Assembly: GCA_000320545.1 (NCBI GenBank)
Contig: ADNK01000171.1
Coordinates: 6,446 to 70,445 of the forward strand
From: Bigelowiella natans CCMP2755
Taxonomy: Eukaryota; Protista; Cercozoa
Direction: 5' to 3'
Length of the DNA: 64,000 nt
In this document: piece after piece, positions 41,732 to 63,206 of the stretch
Position numbering within the stretch: the first letter of the stretch is position 1
How the letters are laid out: each line of letters starts with the position of its first letter
Translations under genes and position numbers: made by a program
The notes under the pieces: model-generated
Database searches by the model: none
Told to the model about the DNA's origin: nothing
The model's input: the letters and a program-made list of their open reading frames with translations, nothing else

Positions 41732-43129
41732 ATTGCATTGCAATTTGTCTTGTAGATGGTTGAGATCTTTCGCTGTTGTTTTGACTCAAAATTCCGTTTT
41801 GGGGTGGAGTGTTGTTGCCACATTTTGGAAGTGACGAACAGTTTCCTTGGTGTATCATAGCATTAGTTTAGTCGTGGTCGTTTTTTTGTGTCAAAAAAAC
41901 TTGACATTCGATCAGTCCGTGATTCCACTTCAGTTTTCATTGCCCTCTTTCCAACCGTTGCGTTCATGCATTTCTGCAAGCACAGCTAGACAGCACAGCA
42001 CGAGCCCATGTGATGTCACAGCTCCACAGCTACTGCAGCATTTGCCACTCGATCAGTGCATCAGATGCATTGTCACGCGTGCCATGCATGGCCATGCCAG
42101 CATGTGTGGCGAACGTGTGCACACAGCACACAGCACACAGCACTGTGACGTGCATGTCACAGAAAATTGCAGCATCGCCATCTACACATCGCATCTACGA
42201 GCCAATTGCGCTGGCATGCCAGCACGCCGCGCCAGCGCAGCGCGTGTCTGCAGGATCGGAGATGATGGACACAGCAATGATGTAGCGCGTACCACTACGC
42301 GGGCACAAGTCACGTGCGACAACAAAGGGGTTGTCGCGGATATAGAATATAGATAACGTAGATATTAATACAGCATAGGCACGTGGGTTCCGGCGGGACT
42401 CATGGCAGCACACCGGAAGTGTGCTGCCCCACGTGCGGCGGCATTCGCGAAAGCTTCGCGAATGATTACGCAGTGCACGATTTAATAAAAATATAATCTT
42501 TAATAAAAATAAACACAACTCTTCAAAAGGAAGCAAACGTGCCTTTCCCCCCCCCTGCCTACTTGTGCACGTAGCGCCTCGGCCTGTGAACACCTTACGC
42601 GCAACAATGATTGTCCATCATGCAGTGAACAATGATGTCAACTCTGACATGCGCGCCTCGATCATGATGATGCCGAGCGAAGGACGGGACGACTTCATTT
42701 GCACGTTCACTGTGTGATCGATTGCATTGCTTGGCTTGTGCTTTTGACCACCCCATCACTCAGCAGCTAGCAGTGGCGTGTGTCACATCAATCGCTCTGG
42801 CCTCGCACTTAGTGCCAGTTTGCGCCACCCGAACGCACTTGTCGCAGATGGAAGACGCCACTGCACACCGTTGTCGTACGGAGTTGTCGCAGGACAAAAA
42901 CGCCATGCACAAGCACAAATTTGCAACTTTATTGACCGGCAGATCTAGCCTCAAATGAGCATGGTGGGCGCAGGACTGCCGGTGAGCGCAGTGTCGATCA
43001 TCCCGGATGGGCCAATTCTCACTACAAAAGTCAAATTTGTGTAATTGCTAAGCTTTGTTTTTTGTGTCGTTGTGTAACAAAGCCACCTCCTCCGCCGACT
43101 AAAGCAAAGGACGAATCTTTATCTAAGTA

Positions 43130-50634: not shown

Positions 50635-51104
50635 GGAGGGGGAAGGAAGGCCAGAGATCAGATTTGGTGTGCGACGGATGCAAGTGTTTCCAGTGTCGGT
50701 AAAAATTCAAAAAAACCATCGCGTTTCTTTTTCGCGACAACAAAACGCTTGCGTTTTGTGGTGTAACCAGCCGCTTTTGTTTTGCCGCGATCATCATCAG
50801 GACCGTGCGCGATTGCACAGCCTCTTTGGATCGTGCGACATGGAATGAGATCGTGAAACGGTCAGGTAGTGGCCTATGGCCAAGTCGCATGACAAAGATC
50901 TCCTACATCATTGCATCATCATGGCACTTTTCGAGTGATCTTGCTGTTTCGGAACATTCCTAGCAAATTCTTTCTCCTTCTGATGCTTGCCGAACTCCAT
51001 GTGTGCTAGTAGTGGTGTCTCTGTCTTCCACAGACTCAAAACTCAATCGCCGGTGAAGGCGCTCAAAACACACTAAATGGGGTATGAAGACTCCCGCATG
51101 TTTC

Positions 51105-51189
51105 GATCTCCATTCGGTAAATGGGCCTGGTTCAGTAGCAGTAAGAGTTACTGAAACCAGGCTGTGAGGTTCGACTCCTCACGAGATCA
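51105..51189 (+). ncRNA. tRNA-like cloverleaf (tRNA mimic, not a canonical tRNA)
   Basis: Stems: GATCTC(51105-10)/GAGATC(51183-88); T-arm GTGAGG-TTCGACT-CCTCAC; D-like CATT-CGGTA-AATG; and a 15-bp elongated arm (51125-51162) with a 7-nt loop. Discriminator-like A at 51189. Confidence 0.6.
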
Positions 51190-51190
51190 C

Positions 51191-51399
51191 GGGGAGGTAA
51201 ACTCGATTGTCACCACGGTGCACTTTCGATTCCCTACCTCCCACAAGGCCTAAAGGAGGCCCACTAGTTGGGTCTTATAAGGTTCCGACCGCTTCCTTTA
51301 GGTGGCTACTGGTGTGGGATGAGGGGCCAGTTGAAGCTAAGGGTTTTTTAAGCCCATACTCTCTATATATGATTTTCGTCCGGCAAAGTTTACCTCCCT
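51191..51399 (+). ncRNA. Multi-branched structured RNA domain in the 5' leader of ORF 51452
   Basis: Closing helix GGGAGGTAAACT(51192-203)/AGTTTACCTCCC(51387-98). Nested helices: TCCCACA/TGTGGGA, CCTAAAGGA/TCCTTTAGG, CCCA/TGGG, GGT/ACC and GGGTTT/AAGCCC. Confidence 0.55.
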
Positions 51400-51451
51400 T
51401 TGCGCGGATTTTTTAACATGACGAGGGAATGAAACAAAAGTATCAAAAATT

Positions 51452-52855
51452 ATGAAGTCAGTCTGGACTAAAGCCAATGAAGTGGATTCTTACAATGAAG
51501 AAGAAGAAGTGACGATGTTCGTGAAGAGAAAGCTGTTCATAGCCAGAGTTTCTTCAGTCTCAGCGAAACAAGCACTAGTGACATATGTGAATGAAGACAC
51601 TGGGGAAGATGAAATGATTCTCAGGAGACAATATGCACTTCGGCCTGCTGAATCACTCTCTCTGAGGAACTTTAGAGATGAATCATTTAGGATTCCACTA
51701 CCTCGCAAAGCCATAGATCTAGCTCGACACCTTGAGGAAGGGGATGTCATCCAAATTGTCCAAGCCACAGTAACCTATGCTGCAGATGGTACCTCTGAAG
51801 ATGTTTTACTTCGGGCTCCCCTGATCTCTGGTAGATTAAATCGAGAAAAGGTCAAAACCTGCGAGGTGGTAGTTGAGGACAACCTCCCTGTGAAATTTGA
51901 TGAAATATTGGAAACTTGCGAAGCTTCTTCAGCAGATGCTACTTGTAAGGCTACTACTGCTGCTGCTGATGAGGTTGATGACGACGACACTGTCTCGACT
52001 GTCACCGAAACTGTTGATGGAGAGCAGAATGACGTGATAGGCAACAGTGAAATAGAACCTGAGGAGATGAAGGCACATGAGAGCCACGACTGCGACGACC
52101 TTGGGGAAAGGGTTTATGCTCAGATGGACTCAATCATTTGTAAATTGACAGGCATGTTTCTTGAAAATGAGAGGGAGCAAGTTGAAGCAGTCATATGTGA
52201 TAAGTTTACGCTTCGTGAGGGAATGATCAGAGCTTTACAGCATCTCAACGAAGCAGAGAAAGAAGAGCAGCTGCCTACTTCAGAAGTGAAAACACAACTG
52301 GATACTCCTACTCGTGCTCCTGTGGTTCAGCCTCCAAAGACAAAGACTAAGCAAGATTGGAAGGATTTGAGAAGAAAATTAAGAGGAGAACCACAGTGTA
52401 CTGAGAGAGCGAGCAATGTGAAGAGGGAGAAGGTTTCGAAGGCTCCAGAGGAATTTGAACAGAAATCTGAGCTATCTAAATTGCATCGAGCAGATACCAG
52501 AACAATGAAGAGCCTTGAGATCCCTTCTCTGTTGAAGCCTATTCATGGTGGTGATGATGGCTGGAAGACTGTCACAAGCAAGAAACCCAAGAGAAGGTAT
52601 CTGAAACTTCGGATCGAAGATCTTAGAGCTGGAGACGAGTACGTGGGAGAAGTTACGGACGCCTTCAACTTCGGTTGCTTCATAAACTTCGGATGTGAAA
52701 AGGAAGGACTCATGCGCTATGCCCACCCACGGAGCAAATCTGTGGGGCCTAAGGACAGGTTCGGGGTGAAGCGGGGGCAGAAAATGAAGGTCAGGGTGTT
52801 CAATGCTGACAGCTGTCGTCGAAGGATTAATCTAGACTTTGTCCACTATGCTTGA
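51452..52855 (+). CDS. Intronless 467-aa protein with an MLLE/PABC-like domain and a C-terminal S1 RNA-binding domain
   Basis: DLGERVYAQM..KLTGMFLE..LREGMIRALQHL resembles the MLLE consensus LGERLFPLI..KITGMLLE. IEDLRAGDEYVGEVTDAFNFGCFINFG..EGLM..GQKMKVRVFNADSCRRRINL resembles a Tex/rpS1-type S1 domain. Confidence 0.8.
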   Translation: MKSVWTKANEVDSYNEEEEVTMFVKRKLFIARVSSVSAKQALVTYVNEDTGEDEMILRRQYALRPAESLSLRNFRDESFRIPLPRKAIDLARHLEEGDVIQIVQATVTYAADGTSEDVLLRAPLISGRLNREKVKTCEVVVEDNLPVKFDEILETCEASSADATCKATTAAADEVDDDDTVSTVTETVDGEQNDVIGNSEIEPEEMKAHESHDCDDLGERVYAQMDSIICKLTGMFLENEREQVEAVICDKFTLREGMIRALQHLNEAEKEEQLPTSEVKTQLDTPTRAPVVQPPKTKTKQDWKDLRRKLRGEPQCTERASNVKREKVSKAPEEFEQKSELSKLHRADTRTMKSLEIPSLLKPIHGGDDGWKTVTSKKPKRRYLKLRIEDLRAGDEYVGEVTDAFNFGCFINFGCEKEGLMRYAHPRSKSVGPKDRFGVKRGQKMKVRVFNADSCRRRINLDFVHYA

Positions 52856-53063
52856 TGTGGTACAAGAGTCCAAAGGAACAAAAAGTAACAAGAACAAGGA
52901 ATCAGAACAAAGGCTTGTGCACATGAGCAGACATTTACAGATTCACTCGATGTCACTGGTCTCAGAAATGTTCAAGGCTGACAGCTGTCGTCGAAGGATT
53001 TGTCTAGACTTCGTCCATTATGCCTGATGTGGTACAAGAGTCCAAAGGAACAAAAAGTAACAA
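52797..53063 (+). repeat. 95-bp direct repeat x2 (52797-52891 and 52969-53063) covering the ORF 3' end
   Basis: The copies align without gaps, with 6 mismatches. Confidence 0.95.
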
Positions 53064-53916
53064 TCATTGCGGGCTGCAAATTGTCATAAGGGAACATCGG
53101 CGTAACCCTGAAATTACCGTCTGGAACGGTGCGCCTATTTTCGAATTTTCCTTCAAGACCGTTCCCATCTCAGCGCATATGTGTATGATTTGGATGCAAA
53201 CGTTGTCACAAACATGGAATTTTGCTACGGCATCAACATTGTCTAGCTGTGCATGTGCCTGTGCATTTGCATGTGTGTGCGAATCTACATGTGTGTGTGT
53301 TATGTGTGTGTGCGCGCGCGCGTTGTCTAGTACACGCGCAGCGCAGCTGGCATCGTCGATCACACTAGCTTGGCTAGCTGTGCGACAACGAGGAGGCATT
53401 TCACTTGTACACTTGGTGGCAGTCTAGCAGTCTTACCAGCAGCGTGACTGCTCGCAGCACTGGCCACTGCATGCTATGGCCTCAGCGCGGCAGTGTGCTT
53501 CTTGCACAGCAGCGCATCTTGTTTGCTGCGAAAGCCACCTTCCGCCGTTCTTGCTTGCGCTGATATAGATTGTCACATCATCTGGACATGTGCAAGCTGA
53601 CTGTAAAGTAATTGTCTCCGATGTCCGCGCATCGCTGGAAACACTTTGTTCATTGGATTTTGGTCATTGCATTCATGCAACATGTTGATTGGCGCGGCGG
53701 CCTAGCGTCATGCATGATCGAATCGAACCATGCCGAGGTCATTAGGCGGCATCGGCCATAGCGCTGCATATATGTGAAGCGGATACACACGTTTAACTCA
53801 CATTCATCTGATCTGTTACTACATGCACGCATGCAAAGCTTGTGTGTGCCCACACGGCAGCGCTATCTTGTCACTGACGTTTAGACGTAGGGAATCTATT
53901 AGGTCTAACAACTCAG

Positions 53917-59590: not shown

Positions 59591-62522
59591 ATGGCGGCGA
59601 ACGGGTTCCCGCGCTTTGACCTATCGCGGTTCAGGACAATGTACGATTTGGTGCTGTGAGGGTTTCTAGCGAGGAATTTTGAAGGCAATCTATTCTGTCT
59701 ATCTTTCAACATATAGGTCCGAGCGGCCTCGGGCGATGCATGAAAGATGGCTTCATGATTGGAGATCGCAGCGAGAGGCGCTTCAGTACAAATACAAATA
59801 CATAGGAAGTTATCTTAGATGCATATCAAACCTTATCCCTCCTGGACAAAAGTTGCTGTGAATCTGGCTATTCTCCATCCTTTCCCATCCAATTTATGCG
59901 CGCTTTCTTGCGTGACTCTAAATCTGCCGTTGATAAGTTTCTGCATTTCGTTGAAACTTCATCAGGGAAGCTGTGACGGAGCGAGAGATGAGGGTCCTGA
60001 CACAGAAGGCCGATACATGGTACGCAATCTTCCTGTATTTCCTTCGGAGTAGTGCGTCTGAGTTTATCGTACAAAGCTGCGGGGAATAAGACCTTGGAAC
60101 TAATAACATACTTTCCCAGTAACCGCATCATTCTGACATCATATCCTCCTCCAGGCATGAGGCAAAAATAGAGCGCAAGGCTTGGTGGAATTGGCGCAAA
60201 ATGACACGAATTTCATGGTAGTATTCTCAGAACCATCAACAAAATAAGAGTTTATGTGGCCCGCCATCACCCTTTCACTCATTTTCCTTTCCTTGCAGGG
60301 AAGAAGGGAAGGAAGCCAGACGCGTATGGCGCAGGCAGGGGCTCGAGCGATTTTTAAGGTTTTGGCTTGAGCAGAGTACTAGAAGAAGAAGACGAAAGCA
60401 ATAGTCTCGCGTTTGTCTGCTATAACATCATGGGTGGAGCAGATTACCTGTGTGTTGCATGCATAATGTGGCCATTATAATAATGTCGCGGATGATGATG
60501 ATGATGAAAATAGGAAGTGGAAGTTCCACACAGCTACGCAGCAACGGAAAGTGGCGCTGAATCTTCTCGCGTGGGAGCATAGCCGTTTTGCTCTAGGAAG
60601 AAGAGGTTCCTCACACACACACACACACATACACATACACACACACGCAAAGACACTGATTCAATTAACTGTTTCTCCTCCCTCCCCTCCCCCTATTTCT
60701 TCCCCCCTCCCCCGCAATAACATACTCATGCACTAATCCACACTTACACCAACTCTCCACTGCCGCAGTTTTGAAAGACATGGTGGCCGCGGGGCGCGCT
60801 TGCAAAGCTGAACGCGCCCGCATAGCCCAGATGGCGACAGGTCTGCTGCCGCTGCTGCTCCCTACCATCCTCTTTCATACAGGAAGAGACACATCTCCCC
60901 GCGCTGACGAAAAGCGAAGTCGTCTGAGCGAATGCACTGACGTGACGGCATTGCTCCTTTTTCATTGTCTTTGGTTCGGTTTCTGTCTGTCTGTCTGTGC
61001 AGCGCGGATACTGGTGTTGAAGTGCAAATGGCGCTTGCTCACGTGGCGGTCCGACACGCGTCGGAGGAGGAGCGAGCGGGCGAGCATCTGGAGAGCGGTA
61101 CGGCGTTTGTGCGCAGGCGCGCAAGAAGATGTTTGGCGCAACAACAACGATAACAACAGCAACAACAACAACGGCGTGAAGCTCGTCTCCTCAGCTTGTG
61201 AGGTGTATATTAATATGTCCTCTGCCGCTGCTGCTTCGTCTCCTCCTCTCCCCCCCCCACACAGATGGTAGGATCGGGACTGCGTCGCTGGGCATCGTTT
61301 GTTGTCGACGCCAGATACAACCGGAGGTATGTGCTGCATTTATTCCTATGTATGATAATGAGATTTTCTGCGCCCACCTAAGAGTCTGCATGACACGCAA
61401 CTACCATCATCATCGTCATCGTCGTCGTCACAGTCTTATGCGAAACCAACCGCCAAGGCCGCACACACACAACGCCGCCAATCCAAAGTGTGCACTAGTA
61501 TACGTGCCCCCCACCCAAGATCATTCCTCTTCCACTGCGGCTTGCTGCTGCTACTCCTCACCAAAATACTGCTGCTGCTTGCCAACACACGCGTTCTCCC
61601 AACAGGCTACACCTGCTCAGCCTCGGCCTTATCCGCCACAGCCGCCTCCAACGCGGCGTGCGTGCGCTTCTCCACCTTGCGCGGGTGAATCGACCAAGGG
61701 TCCTTCTCTGCCGCGCGTCGGCCCAACGCCAAGCTGCCAAGGCAATGCGTGTGTGGCGGGTGGAACTTGCTCTCCGAAAGAGGAGCAATCATGGCTGCGA
61801 CGGACTCATCGTGCACAAGTTGCTGGCGCTCTGTGGAGGTGGGCCCGTTGGGCACGCGGCAAGCGCCATCGACGCGCTGAGGAGGAGGCACGTGCTCGCG
61901 TGGCCACAGTGCAATGGTATAGTGCTAGTGTGTAGGTCCTGCCCCTCCCCCTCCCCCCTCTTTTTTTTTTAAAATCGATCTCATCGATGCATTCGAAAGG
62001 GCTAGAGAGAGGTGTTCGGCCTTCTCTTCAGTTTTGTGCGAAGTCTTTCAAGCGCAGGATGTGATTCGTTTTGAGAGTTGTTGTCCGTTTTCGATCGATC
62101 AGACAGATTTTGCAACCGCATGCACGCATGCTACAGCTATCATCGCTGCCATCGCCATCATCACTGCCATCGCCATCATCTTGACCATCATTATTCCACG
62201 AAAAAATCCTGATACGTCGCCGAAAAATATTAGGTACCGCACCATGATCGCAGGCACCATGAAGCACTGGTATCTCCGCACCTGCGAAGCCGTCAATTTG
62301 ACCATCCTCGCCGTCGAGGAGGAGCGGCAAAGAGAAATCCAACGACACCGGGTGGCTCAGGAGCAACGCTCGGAGCATAAGGAAGAGGACCTCACCGGCG
62401 GTGAAGACGAAACTGACGAGGAAGCACTCCGGCCCTCCTCTACTCCTCCATACGGCGTAACTGTGGTTTTCCCCGCGGCCTCGGCCCACCGTTCAGGCAG
62501 CGAGAGAACGCAGCGGCAGTAG
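59591..62522 (+). CDS. Sfi1-repeat-like (putative centrin-binding) Trp/Arg-rich protein
   Basis: Spliced repeats KADTWHEAKIERKAWWNWRK, EARRVWRRQGLERFL, RQAAKAMRVWRV and MIAGTMKHWY resemble the Sfi1 A-x7-LL-x3-F-x2-W pattern. Confidence 0.5.
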
Positions 62523-63206
62523 TGCTGCTGCTGCGCTATGAGTCACTTTCTGCTGCTGCTGCAGCAGCGTCGTGATGAGTGGCGAGAAAATAACAGGGGT
62601 CATTGTCGATCCTAGATCGCCACACGATTATTATGCCAGTATTTATTTGTGTGGACGAACAAGTTGAATGAATGTGATTATTATGAGAACTATGTACATT
62701 GCACATCGCAGCGGACGGAGGGCCACCATGCTATGTATGCGCGTCGAATGCTTGCTATTATTCGCAGTTGCTTGTTGAATTAGTAAAAAGCGGCGCGTAT
62801 GCATCGTATGCATCGTTTGTGTCAAGACCATAGCAAGAAGTGTGGCAATATATCTTGCAGCATACATCACAACGCCCTAGCTAGGTAGCTAGATGATCGC
62901 ATCAACTTTGTGTGCGGAAGACATGCATGTGTGCAGGAGTAATGCATGCAATGCTAATGCAAGGATTTATTGGCCGGCGGACATCGCAACGACTTCTAGA
63001 CGTGTACGAGCGGCAAGCGATAAGATAAGTGTCACGTTCCCAGTCGTACATATGCGTCACGCTAAGTCATAAAAAGTCATAGCTTGGGACGCTTGAATAC
63101 TTACGAGTAACAACAACTTGGTTTGTACATGCATATCGCTAGATCTCTCTCGATTGCCATTATTTTTTCTGTTTGGCGGCTTCAGTACTAATTTTAGCGT
63201 ACAAAT

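What the first reader, a model, noticed from the sequence alone, without database searches (positions are those of the whole stretch)
51105..51190. tRNA mimic with 6+6 acceptor/T stack and 15-bp extended anticodon-like arm, directly abutting the next RNA domain
Seen: a perfect B-box/T-loop (GGTTCGACTCC) and a 12-bp acceptor+T stack split 6/6 rather than 7/5. There is also a GG-containing mini D-loop, a long arm with a 7-nt loop (AGTAAGA) and an A-box-like TGGTTCAGTAG (51128-38). The discriminator-like A51189 lies just before the 5' strand of the closing helix. Established: RNase P and RNase Z recognise the acceptor/T-arm geometry, as in mascRNA/menRNA. Inference: RNase Z cleavage would release a downstream RNA with an uncapped, base-paired 5' end. 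Alternatively the element is a SINE-like Pol III promoter.
Basis: partly seen in the sequence, partly recalled or inferred. Interest (0 to 1): 0.8.

Follow-up and report, generated by a model that had tools for sequence, protein, structure and literature searches.

The report
tRNA-shaped element before a conserved leader
An 85-base stretch of nuclear DNA from the alga Bigelowiella folds into a tRNA-shaped RNA that is not a tRNA and lies directly before a conserved, structured mRNA leader; it may be cut by tRNA-processing enzymes to make that mRNA's start, but this is not shown.

Summary
Window 51105-51189 (+) folds into a cloverleaf with no junction linkers. It has a 6-bp acceptor, a 4-bp D stem with loop CGGUA, a 16-bp long arm with loop AGUAAGA, and a 6-bp T stem with loop UUCGACU (-41.4 kcal/mol, z -6.5). 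A T-loop plus 12-bp-stack descriptor finds it once in the window, against 0.02 per shuffle. ARAGORN and Rfam do not call it a tRNA, tRNA-Sec or mascRNA.

The window is Bigelowiella (chlorarachniophyte) nuclear DNA. The element ends 263 nt before the ATG of a lineage-restricted gene with weak S1 and MLLE matches. JGI model 85350 translates through the element; the window has a TGA there, so that extension is an artefact.

The leader that follows is 93% identical in a paralogue's environmental contigs (dS 0.18), and every in-helix change preserves pairing. One such contig starts 7 nt after the predicted RNase Z site.

Best reading (0.35): a mascRNA- or t-element-like processing signal that defines the leader's 5' end. 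Main rival (0.30): a tRNA-derived relic or Pol III/TFIIIC site in the promoter. The element itself could not be seen in any second genome.

The parts
51105..51189 (+). tRNA-shaped element. Acceptor 51105-10/51183-88; D arm 51111-23 (loop CGGUA); long arm 51124-63 (16 bp, loop AGUAAGA at 51140-46, bulged A51154); T arm 51164-82 (loop UUCGACU); discriminator-position A51189.
   Evidence: Sequence. Fold -41.4 kcal/mol, z -6.5. Descriptor hit is unique against 0.02 per shuffle. No tRNA call. Rfam best matches are 14 bits for mascRNA-menRNA and 12.7 bits for tRNA-Sec, far below the gathering scores.
51190..51451 (+). Conserved structured 5' leader. 5'-end hairpin 51192-99/51235-42; hairpin A 51203-29; helix B 51249-60/51291-302 with inner hairpin 51267-89; hairpin C 51303-39; hairpin D 51341-55; hairpin E 51378-409; possible domain-closing helix 51230-35/51424-29.
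   Evidence: 92.8% identical to L004:1-253, against dS 0.18 in the CDS. RNAalifold predicts 73 pairs: 6 one-sided changes all keep the pair and none is broken. No Rfam match.
51192..51203 (+). It overlaps a GAG|GUAAAC splice-donor-like site at 51197.
   Evidence: Perfect 12-nt inverted repeat with 51387-51398. Not conserved in L004 and of low pair probability.
51387..51398 (+). 3' arm of the "closing helix". It lies in the stem and loop of hairpin E.
   Evidence: In L004, U51391 is C and C51397 is A; both positions are in the loop of hairpin E.
51344..51349 (+). T6 run in the loop of hairpin D (T5 in the paralogue). It would be the first Pol III terminator after the element.
51409..51414 (+). 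Second T6 run, directly after hairpin E. In the paralogue it is interrupted (TTTGTTTT).
51429..51455 (+). Upstream ORF of 8 codons whose TGA overlaps the main ATG. Its start and first 7 codons are conserved in L004.
51452..52855 (+). 467-aa ORF (P0001). A Bigelowiella-restricted protein with weak S1 and MLLE matches.
   Evidence: dN/dS 0.43 against the paralogue.
51084..51167 (+). Reading frame that JGI model 85350 uses as the coding start. It runs through the element and is closed in this window by TGA 51165-67.
   Evidence: P0004 N-terminus compared with the window translation.

Best explanation
Window 51105-51189 is a genuine tRNA-shaped RNA element that does not decode. It has the same architectural type as mascRNA/menRNA and the plant mitochondrial t-elements. 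It lies at -263 of a Bigelowiella-specific nuclear gene.

Proposed mechanism:
1. The element is transcribed as part of a longer precursor.
2. It folds into an L-shape through its T-loop and the two G of its mini D-loop.
3. RNase P cuts before G51105 and RNase Z cuts after A51189, because the elbow-to-cleavage-site distance (a 6+6 = 12 bp stack) equals that of a tRNA.
4. This releases a small RNA of about 85 nt, probably CCA-tailed. It also creates the 5' end of the downstream RNA at about C51190.
5. The first bases of that downstream RNA are tucked into a local 8-bp hairpin (51192-99/51235-42).
6. That RNA is the conserved, multi-hairpin 260-nt leader of the mRNA for the 467-aa protein.

Shown: the structure and its improbability by chance; that it is not a tRNA; that the adjacent leader is under purifying selection with pair-preserving changes; and that a paralogue's contig begins 7 nt after the predicted cut.

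Inferred: transcription through the element, both cleavages, CCA addition, and any consequence for capping or translation.
For: - Cloverleaf at -41.4 kcal/mol, z -6.5.
- All four helices are perfect apart from one bulge, so the element is not decayed.
- Unique descriptor hit, against 0.02 per shuffle.
- Canonical T-loop, GG D-loop, zero linker residues and a lengthened anticodon-like stem. This matches the features that PMC11693755 reports for mascRNA/menRNA and ties to RNase P/Z recognition.
- The best, though weak, Rfam match is mascRNA-menRNA.
- Precedent for RNase Z making an mRNA 5' end behind a t-element: Arabidopsis mitochondrial cox1 at -241 (PMC1920247).
- The leader directly after the element has 9 differences in its first 170 nt, against 12.5% at third codon positions and dS 0.18 (Fisher p 0.008).
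- All 6 in-helix changes keep the pair and 0 of 73 pairs are broken.
- L004 starts at window position 51197.
- The 5' end is base-paired locally with p > 0.94.
- No target-site duplication or tail that would mark a SINE insertion.
- The frame through the element is closed by a TGA, so it is not coding.
Against: - There is no direct evidence that the element is transcribed or cut.
- The element itself could not be seen in any second genome, so there is no covariation evidence for the cloverleaf.
- The only cross-strain information is indirect. The CCMP2755 model has Cys where the window has TGA, so T-stem base A51167 is C or U there. Whether its partner U51179 compensates is invisible at protein level.
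- The L004 start is a single contig end. The sample type (RNA or DNA) was not given, and the start also coincides exactly with the GT of a predicted splice donor.
- With 50-100 nt of upstream RNA attached, the acceptor and D stems are out-competed in silico (p 0.06-0.14).
- An RNase Z product would be an uncapped nuclear mRNA. That needs special protection and cap-independent translation, for which there is no evidence.
Confidence: 0.35

Rival explanations
1. The element is a tRNA-derived relic, a low-copy tRNA-derived repeat, or a small autonomous Pol III/TFIIIC-bound unit (B-box site) that happens to lie in the promoter. The mRNA starts by ordinary Pol II initiation at about 51190-51197, is capped, and never contains the element.
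For: - Perfect B-box GGTTCGACTCC and an A-box-like motif 40 nt upstream of it.
- The anticodon-stem-like CCUGG/CCAGG and the T arm resemble ordinary tRNA parts.
- The L004 start fits a transcription start site equally well.
- An uncapped mRNA is not required.
- No ORF of 150 aa or more lies between the RabGAP ORF (ends 48908) and 51100, so this is probably intergenic or promoter DNA, though small exons cannot be excluded.
Against: - A relic should show mismatches, yet about 32 pairs are intact and the extra roughly 23 nt in the long arm are perfectly self-complementary.
- No second copy in 64 kb.
- No target-site duplication or tail.
- The A-box-like motif is too far 3' to start Pol III before the acceptor strand.
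- The next Pol III terminator lies inside a conserved hairpin.
Confidence: 0.3
2. This is a dicistronic Pol III gene. The tRNA-like part supplies the internal promoter, and RNase Z frees a non-coding RNA of about 155 nt (51190 to the T6 run at 51344-49) that is independent of the mRNA.
For: - B-box, and T6/T5 runs conserved in both copies.
- Known kind of gene: tRNA-5S in Yarrowia (PMC2566860, listed) and tRNA-snoRNA in plants (own knowledge).
- The first 150 nt of the leader is its most conserved part.
Against: - Termination at 51344-49 would cut hairpin D in half, yet its 3' half is conserved and the U51344-to-C change strengthens the pair.
- Conservation and contig continuity run on to the ORF.
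- No Rfam family matches the downstream RNA.
- Its fold z-score is only -1.9.
Confidence: 0.1
3. The element is simply exon 1 (coding or 5' UTR) of the gene, as in JGI model 85350, spliced from the donor at 51197. The fold would then be incidental.
For: - The JGI model reads through it.
- GAG|GUAAAC at 51197 is a good donor and CCUUUAG|G at 51300 a good acceptor.
- L004 begins exactly at that GU.
Against: - The frame is closed by TGA 51165-67 in this window.
- Both modelled introns are retained in L003 and L004, and the donor of the second is GC in L004.
- The MMETSP ORFs start at the downstream ATG.
- The fold is far beyond chance.
Confidence: 0.05
4. The element is a functional but odd tRNA gene, for example Leu(CAA), or a UCA-reading tRNA with an intron in the anticodon arm.
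For: With its threshold lowered to 80%, ARAGORN proposes tRNA-Leu(CAA) with a 19-nt intron. A at the discriminator position.
Against: - No call at default thresholds, with or without introns.
- Rfam tRNA-clan score is 12.7 bits or less.
- The ARAGORN model needs a shifted, mismatched acceptor.
- No bulge-helix-bulge or bulged splice sites: the arm is a continuous helix.
- No 8-9 linker, no variable region, and no long variable arm for Leu.
Confidence: 0.02
5. The cloverleaf is a chance combination of hairpins.
For: Other equally stable 86-nt windows exist in the 64 kb. A B-box-like 11-mer alone is not rare.
Against: z -6.5. The descriptor gives 1 hit against 0.02 per shuffle before the D arm and the 16-bp arm, which exactly fill the junction, are even counted.
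Confidence: 0.03

Closest known systems
mascRNA / menRNA (tRNA-like ends of mammalian MALAT1 and NEAT1/MEN-beta; Rfam RF01684)
   Same: Acceptor/T-arm stack of tRNA length. Canonical T-loop. Reduced D stem-loop with two G that build the elbow. No single-stranded linker residues at the four-way junction. Lengthened anticodon-like stem and no usable anticodon (PMC11693755). Proposed processing by RNase P, RNase Z and CCA addition.
   Different: Not homologous: 14 bits against a gathering score of 42.5. It lies upstream of an mRNA leader, so RNase Z rather than RNase P would make the functional end of the long RNA. The stack is split 6/6, not 7/5. The arm is much longer (16 bp). There is no triple-helix ENE. 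The organism is a rhizarian alga, not a mammal.
Plant mitochondrial t-elements (for example, upstream of Arabidopsis cox1)
   Same: Non-canonical cloverleaf carrying the GGTTCRANYCC T-arm motif. It sits a few hundred nt upstream of an ORF (-241 for cox1; -263 here), where RNase Z cleavage makes the mRNA 5' end (PMC1920247).
   Different: Those are organellar, where mRNAs are uncapped anyway. This is nuclear DNA with RabGAP and P450 genes nearby. Cleavage is not mapped here.
Dicistronic Pol III tRNA-ncRNA genes (tRNA-5S rRNA in Yarrowia, PMC2566860; tRNA-snoRNA in plants and gammaherpesvirus tRNA-miRNA units, both from own knowledge)
   Same: A tRNA-type module directly abuts a downstream RNA, with T-runs following. 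RNase Z would separate the two.
   Different: Those have a real tRNA upstream, whereas this element is not one. The downstream RNA here matches no known family and continues into an ORF. The first T-run lies inside a conserved hairpin.
tRNA-derived SINEs
   Same: B-box and an A-box-like motif in a tRNA-related head.
   Different: No second copy in 64 kb, no target-site duplication and no tail. The stems are intact rather than decayed. Genome-wide copy number could not be tested.

Membership tests
Canonical tRNA (Rfam RF00005 / ARAGORN) | Detected by a tRNA covariance model or ARAGORN at normal thresholds | tested here: not met
   ARAGORN finds nothing, with or without introns. Rfam gives no match at gathering score. 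The best tRNA-clan score is 12.7 bits.
Canonical tRNA (Rfam RF00005 / ARAGORN) | 7-bp acceptor, 2-nt linker (positions 8-9), 5-bp anticodon stem with a 7-nt loop and U33, and a variable region of at least 4 nt | tested here: not met
   The acceptor is 6 bp. There are 0 linker nt at all three junctions. The arm is 16 bp and its loop AGUAAGA has G at position 33. There is no variable region.
Canonical tRNA (Rfam RF00005 / ARAGORN) | T arm with a T-loop of type UUCRANY, and G18 G19 in the D-loop | tested here: met
   T-loop UUCGACU closed by a 6-bp stem. D-loop CGGUA.
Intron-containing tRNA | Intron at 37/38 with bulged splice sites, or a bulge-helix-bulge motif | tested here: not met
   The long arm is a continuous helix with a single 1-nt bulge. 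ARAGORN proposes an intron model only at 80% threshold, and with a poor acceptor.
tRNA-Sec (RF01852) | 9/4 or 8/5 stack, UCA anticodon loop, long variable arm, score above gathering | tested here: not met
   12.7 bits against 47. The stack is 6/6 and there is no variable arm.
mascRNA-menRNA (RF01684) | Sequence and structure match above the gathering score | tested here: not met
   14 bits against 42.5, E 1.4.
mascRNA-menRNA (RF01684) | Architecture: linker-less junction, small D-loop with two G, tRNA-like T-loop, long anticodon-like stem | tested here: met
   compared with the description in PMC11693755. This is a similarity of kind, not homology.
mascRNA-menRNA (RF01684) | Lies at the 3' end of a nuclear lncRNA, behind a triple-helix element | tested here: not met
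   It lies 263 nt upstream of an ORF. What follows is a leader and a coding sequence.
t-elements (RNase P/Z processing signals) | Non-canonical cloverleaf with the GGTTCRANYCC motif | tested here: met
t-elements (RNase P/Z processing signals) | Element ends coincide with mapped transcript termini | tested here: inconclusive
   The only datum is that contig L004 (a paralogue, sample type unknown) starts at 51197, which is 7 nt after A51189/C51190.
t-elements (RNase P/Z processing signals) | Cleavage by RNase P and RNase Z | not testable with these tools
   Needs in vitro cleavage or end-mapping.
tRNA-derived SINE | Many dispersed copies | tested here: inconclusive
   There is one copy in 64 kb. 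No hits in viral or metagenome scans other than chance matches. No Bigelowiella genome was searchable.
tRNA-derived SINE | Target-site duplication and an A-rich or LINE-derived tail | tested here: not met
   No flanking direct repeat of 9 nt or more and no tail.
Dicistronic Pol III tRNA-ncRNA gene | Bona fide tRNA upstream and a recognised ncRNA downstream, ended by a T-run | tested here: not met
   The upstream part is not a tRNA. The downstream part matches no Rfam family. T-runs are present, but the first lies inside conserved hairpin D.

The most novel reading that the evidence does not exclude
A nuclear, protein-coding transcript of a eukaryote uses a dedicated tRNA mimic in its 5' region as an RNase P/Z processing signal. 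The mature mRNA would then begin with an uncapped, hairpin-protected 5' end, followed by a conserved IRES-like leader. The released long-armed tRNA mimic would be a separate small RNA. One conceivable role for it is as an RNA-trafficking tag, in an alga that is thought to import RNAs into its periplastidial compartment (idea raised in PMC6461891).
Probability: 0.15. Interest if true: 0.85.

Novelty: new variant of a known kind. Interest (0 to 1): 0.55.

Why it matters
tRNA mimics that recruit RNase P and RNase Z are known at the 3' ends of two mammalian lncRNAs, in organelles and in some viruses. A nuclear mRNA whose 5' end is made this way would be a new use of the tRNA-processing machinery. 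It would raise the question of how an uncapped mRNA is stabilised and translated. It would also show convergent evolution of the mascRNA-type linker-less cloverleaf in a distant eukaryotic lineage (Rhizaria).

Even on the modest reading, two practical points stand. JGI Bigna1 gene model 85350 translates through a structured RNA element and is wrong at its N-terminus. The 260-nt leader is better conserved between paralogues than the protein's non-synonymous sites over its first 170 nt, and is about as conserved as them overall (5.3% and 7.2% against dN 0.077).

Tried and rejected
1. Ordinary or intron-containing tRNA. ARAGORN (default, with introns, and mitochondrial mode) and Rfam give no acceptable call. 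Rejected.
2. Known RNA family for the downstream domain (SRP, RNase P/MRP, U3, snRNAs and others). No Rfam match even at E up to 10 on the 271-nt stretch. No telomerase-like template and no convincing Sm site by eye.
3. Second copy in the window. None.
4. Homologous DNA elsewhere. The viral scan found nothing.
5. Fetching the locus from other Bigelowiella data through exact proteins. P0001, P0003, P0004 and P0007 are not on record. Only P0005 gave contigs.
6. Catching contigs that cover the element through peptides translated from it.
   - Minus frame, 72 aa: one chance hit, to a Cys-rich repeat protein.
   - Plus frame 51145-51264: nothing.
   - P0004:1-40: nothing.
7. Transposon or viral origin of the gene. 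No reverse-transcriptase or similar domains nearby and no viral relatives. Only two gene copies are known.
8. Protein structure for context. The AlphaFold model has pLDDT 33 and is unusable, so no fold search was run.
9. Literature. No paper in the library links Bigelowiella with a tRNA-like element of this kind. One broad search was uninformative. The JGI sample ids were not found in any paper.

Full report
**What the window is**

ORF 51452-52855 (+) is identical to a EukProt protein. Its 90% cluster contains JGI Bigelowiella natans model 85350 (P0004) and two MMETSP transcripts. Neighbouring ORFs carry RabGAP-TBC and cytochrome P450 domains. Long ORFs are sparse. There is no tRNA and no Rfam family anywhere in the 64 kb. 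This is nuclear DNA of a Bigelowiella (chlorarachniophyte, Rhizaria). It is not human, viral or organellar.

**The observation**

Folding 51105-51190 alone gives exactly the cloverleaf described:
- Acceptor: 6 bp.
- D stem: 4 bp, with loop CGGUA.
- Long arm: 16 bp, with one bulged A and loop AGUAAGA.
- T stem: 6 bp, with loop UUCGACU.
- No unpaired residue lies between any two helices.
- Energy -41.4 kcal/mol, z -6.5, and no shuffle folds as well.

I wrote a minimal descriptor: a T-loop UUCRANY closed by a 5-6 bp stem, followed at once by a 6-7 nt strand that pairs 70-95 nt upstream, giving a 12-bp stack. It hits only this site on both strands and 0.02 times per dinucleotide shuffle. That count does not include the D arm or the long arm, which fill the junction exactly. 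The minus strand folds less well and lacks the T-loop motif.

There are caveats. Other 86-nt windows are equally stable, but none is a cloverleaf. The acceptor and D stems depend on context: probability 0.96 alone, 0.06-0.14 with 50-100 nt of upstream RNA, and 0.6-0.8 in longer transcripts. The T arm and long arm are always above 0.9.

**What it is not**

- It is not a tRNA. ARAGORN is silent at default settings, with introns allowed, and in mitochondrial mode. Only at 70-80% thresholds does it offer poor Leu models with a shifted, mismatched acceptor or a wrong D arm.
- Rfam gives nothing at gathering score. On the 106-nt stretch alone it gives 14 bits for mascRNA-menRNA (gathering 42.5) and 12.7 bits for tRNA-Sec (gathering 47).
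- The long arm is a continuous helix with no bulge-helix-bulge and no bulged splice sites, so it is not a tRNA intron.
- It is not coding. JGI model 85350 begins at ATG 51084 and translates straight through the element, then uses two modelled introns (51197-51300 and 51343-51425) to reach the real ORF. In this window that frame is closed by TGA 51165-67. The MMETSP ORFs start at the downstream ATG. Both "introns" are retained in the contigs of a paralogue, and there the second donor is GC.
The only spliced sequence used was the stored protein, by reference.

**Context gained from a paralogue**

A protein search found one further cluster, P0005 (84% identical). It lies on two JGI environmental contigs, L003 and L004. 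Its cluster also holds JGI model 89016 on a different B. natans scaffold. The gene therefore exists as two paralogues, and L003/L004 represent the second one. No other relatives were found in 5.8 billion proteins, so the gene is lineage-restricted. Its Pfam matches (S1, MLLE) are below threshold, and an AlphaFold model was useless.

The contigs extend into the leader. L004 starts at the position equivalent to window 51197, and L003 at about 51287. Conservation between the two copies is as follows:

| Region | Divergence |
|---|---|
| Leader 51197-51451 | 7.2% (92.8% identical) |
| First 170 nt of the leader | 9 differences |
| CDS, third codon positions | 12.5% |
| CDS, NG86 dS | 0.18 |
| CDS, NG86 dN | 0.077 |

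The difference between the first 170 nt of the leader and the third codon positions gives Fisher p 0.008. Over its first 170 nt the leader is better conserved than the protein's non-synonymous sites; over its whole length it is about as conserved as they are.

RNAalifold on the two leaders predicts 73 pairs. Six substitutions fall in helices, all are one-sided changes that keep the pair, and none breaks one. With only two sequences, and a structure chosen to fit them, this is suggestive and not proof. No Rfam family matches the leader.

**The "closing helix"**

51192-51203 and 51387-51398 are a perfect 12-nt inverted repeat in this window. In L004, however, two bases of the 3' arm differ (51391 and 51397). 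Both lie in the loop of a conserved local hairpin, 51378-51409. Once the leader is folded through to the ATG, the long-range helix has probability 0.02-0.04. The local hairpin 51192-99/51235-42 has probability above 0.94, and its 3' arm is identical in L004.

**How it most likely works**

[quoted passage not shown] RNase P and RNase Z recognise that elbow and measure the distance to the cleavage site (PMC11693755). The Bigelowiella element has each of these properties, and its 6+6 stack keeps the 12-bp distance. In Arabidopsis mitochondria a t-element 241 nt upstream of cox1 directs RNase Z to make the mRNA's 5' end (PMC1920247). Here the element ends 263 nt upstream of the ATG.

I therefore favour a processing-signal model, with confidence 0.35:
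1. RNase P cuts before G51105.
2. RNase Z cuts after A51189.
3. A small RNA of about 85 nt is released. Its acceptor stem is fully paired and does not begin with GG, so I would expect a single CCA and a stable RNA (own knowledge of CCACCA tagging).
4. The leader-mRNA starts at about C51190 with its end tucked into a hairpin.

L004 starts 7 nt after that site, which is what the model predicts. The same datum also fits a Pol II start site. It coincides exactly with the GU of the donor-like GAG|GUAAAC. The tool did not say whether the samples are RNA or DNA. One hint that they are transcriptomes is that L003 ends 7 nt past another modelled donor.

**Rivals**

- **Promoter-resident tRNA-derived relic, low-copy repeat, or Pol III/TFIIIC site (0.30).** It needs no uncapped mRNA and explains the B-box. 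It does not explain why about 32 pairs, including a perfectly self-complementary extension of about 23 nt, are intact. It also does not explain the absence of a target-site duplication or tail.
- **Dicistronic Pol III unit ending at T6 51344-49 (0.10).** Termination there would bisect hairpin D, whose 3' half is conserved and whose one change strengthens a pair.
- **Spliced exon 1 as in the JGI model (0.05), an odd tRNA (0.02), and chance (0.03).** All three are weak, for the reasons given above.

**What could not be done**

No tool held a Bigelowiella genome, so neither the copy number of the element nor its presence upstream of the paralogue could be checked. There is no covariation evidence for the cloverleaf itself.

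The only cross-strain hint is indirect. CCMP2755 has Cys where the window has TGA, so T-stem base 51167 is C or U there. Its partner 51179 is the third base of a Pro codon, so compensation cannot be seen at protein level.

The single metagenome scan returned chance hits. Three peptide-based attempts to catch contigs covering the element failed. These exhausted the caps before a search with the N-terminal domain alone could be run.

**Verdict**

This is a real tRNA-shaped element that does not decode. It has mascRNA/t-element architecture but a new placement (nuclear, 5' of an mRNA leader) and a new shape (6/6 stack, 16-bp arm). It sits next to a leader under purifying selection. Function is inferred and not shown. 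Interest is 0.55. If the processing model is right, it is a new variant of a known kind.

Noticed in passing
window 51084-51427, with JGI Bigna1 model 85350 (P0004): The public gene model's first 52 residues or so are a read-through of the tRNA-shaped element plus two modelled introns. The window has an in-frame TGA (51165-67), and a paralogue's contigs retain both "introns". The N-terminal extension looks like an annotation artefact.
   Followed up: yes
P0007 (JGI Bigna1 model 89016, scaffold 42); L003, L004: The gene has a paralogue in B. natans, 84% identical at protein level. The 260-nt leader is conserved between the two copies (93%) more than synonymous sites are (dS 0.18).
   Followed up: yes
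window 51429-51455: A short upstream ORF (MKQKYQKL) has a stop that overlaps the main ATG (ATGA). Its ATG and first 7 codons are identical in L004, where it runs on into the main ORF in another frame. The 29 nt around it are 100% conserved.
   Followed up: partly
window 52808-52890 and 52980-53063: Direct duplication of about 83 nt covering the last codons of the ORF, its stop and the start of the 3' region. It is absent from the paralogue contig L003.
   Followed up: partly
window 53020-53427; L003:1608-1817: A second ORF follows the main one on the same contig in the paralogue. A block at about 53070-53145 is about 95% conserved. The JGI model splices the main ORF into this region, giving a different C-terminus. 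This could be alternative 3' exons or a bicistronic arrangement. There is no Pfam match.
   Followed up: partly
P0003 (MMETSP transcript): Its N-terminus (MESVWTKSNEVDSYNEEEMTMF...FVARV) matches the paralogue P0007, while the rest is 98% identical to the window copy. This could be gene conversion between the paralogues or a chimeric transcript assembly.
   Followed up: no
window 51197-51203 and 51387-51398: The splice-donor-like GAG|GUAAAC is perfectly complementary (12 nt) to the loop and stem of hairpin E in this copy only. No explanation so far.
   Followed up: partly
window 42375-42490 and 62497-62594: These are the most stable 86-nt folds in the window (-43 to -47 kcal/mol). The first is a cluster of short GC-rich palindromes flanked by AT-rich DNA. 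The second is a CTG/CAG-type repeat hairpin. Neither is related to the finding.
   Followed up: no
window 53270-53325: A (TG)n/(GC)n microsatellite lies shortly downstream of the gene.
   Followed up: no
window 51035-51045 and 51062-51072: An 11-nt direct repeat, CTCAAAAC(T/A)CA, lies 33-70 nt upstream of the element. A TAAAT motif lies about 28 nt upstream of G51105. These may be promoter elements. Not tested.
   Followed up: no
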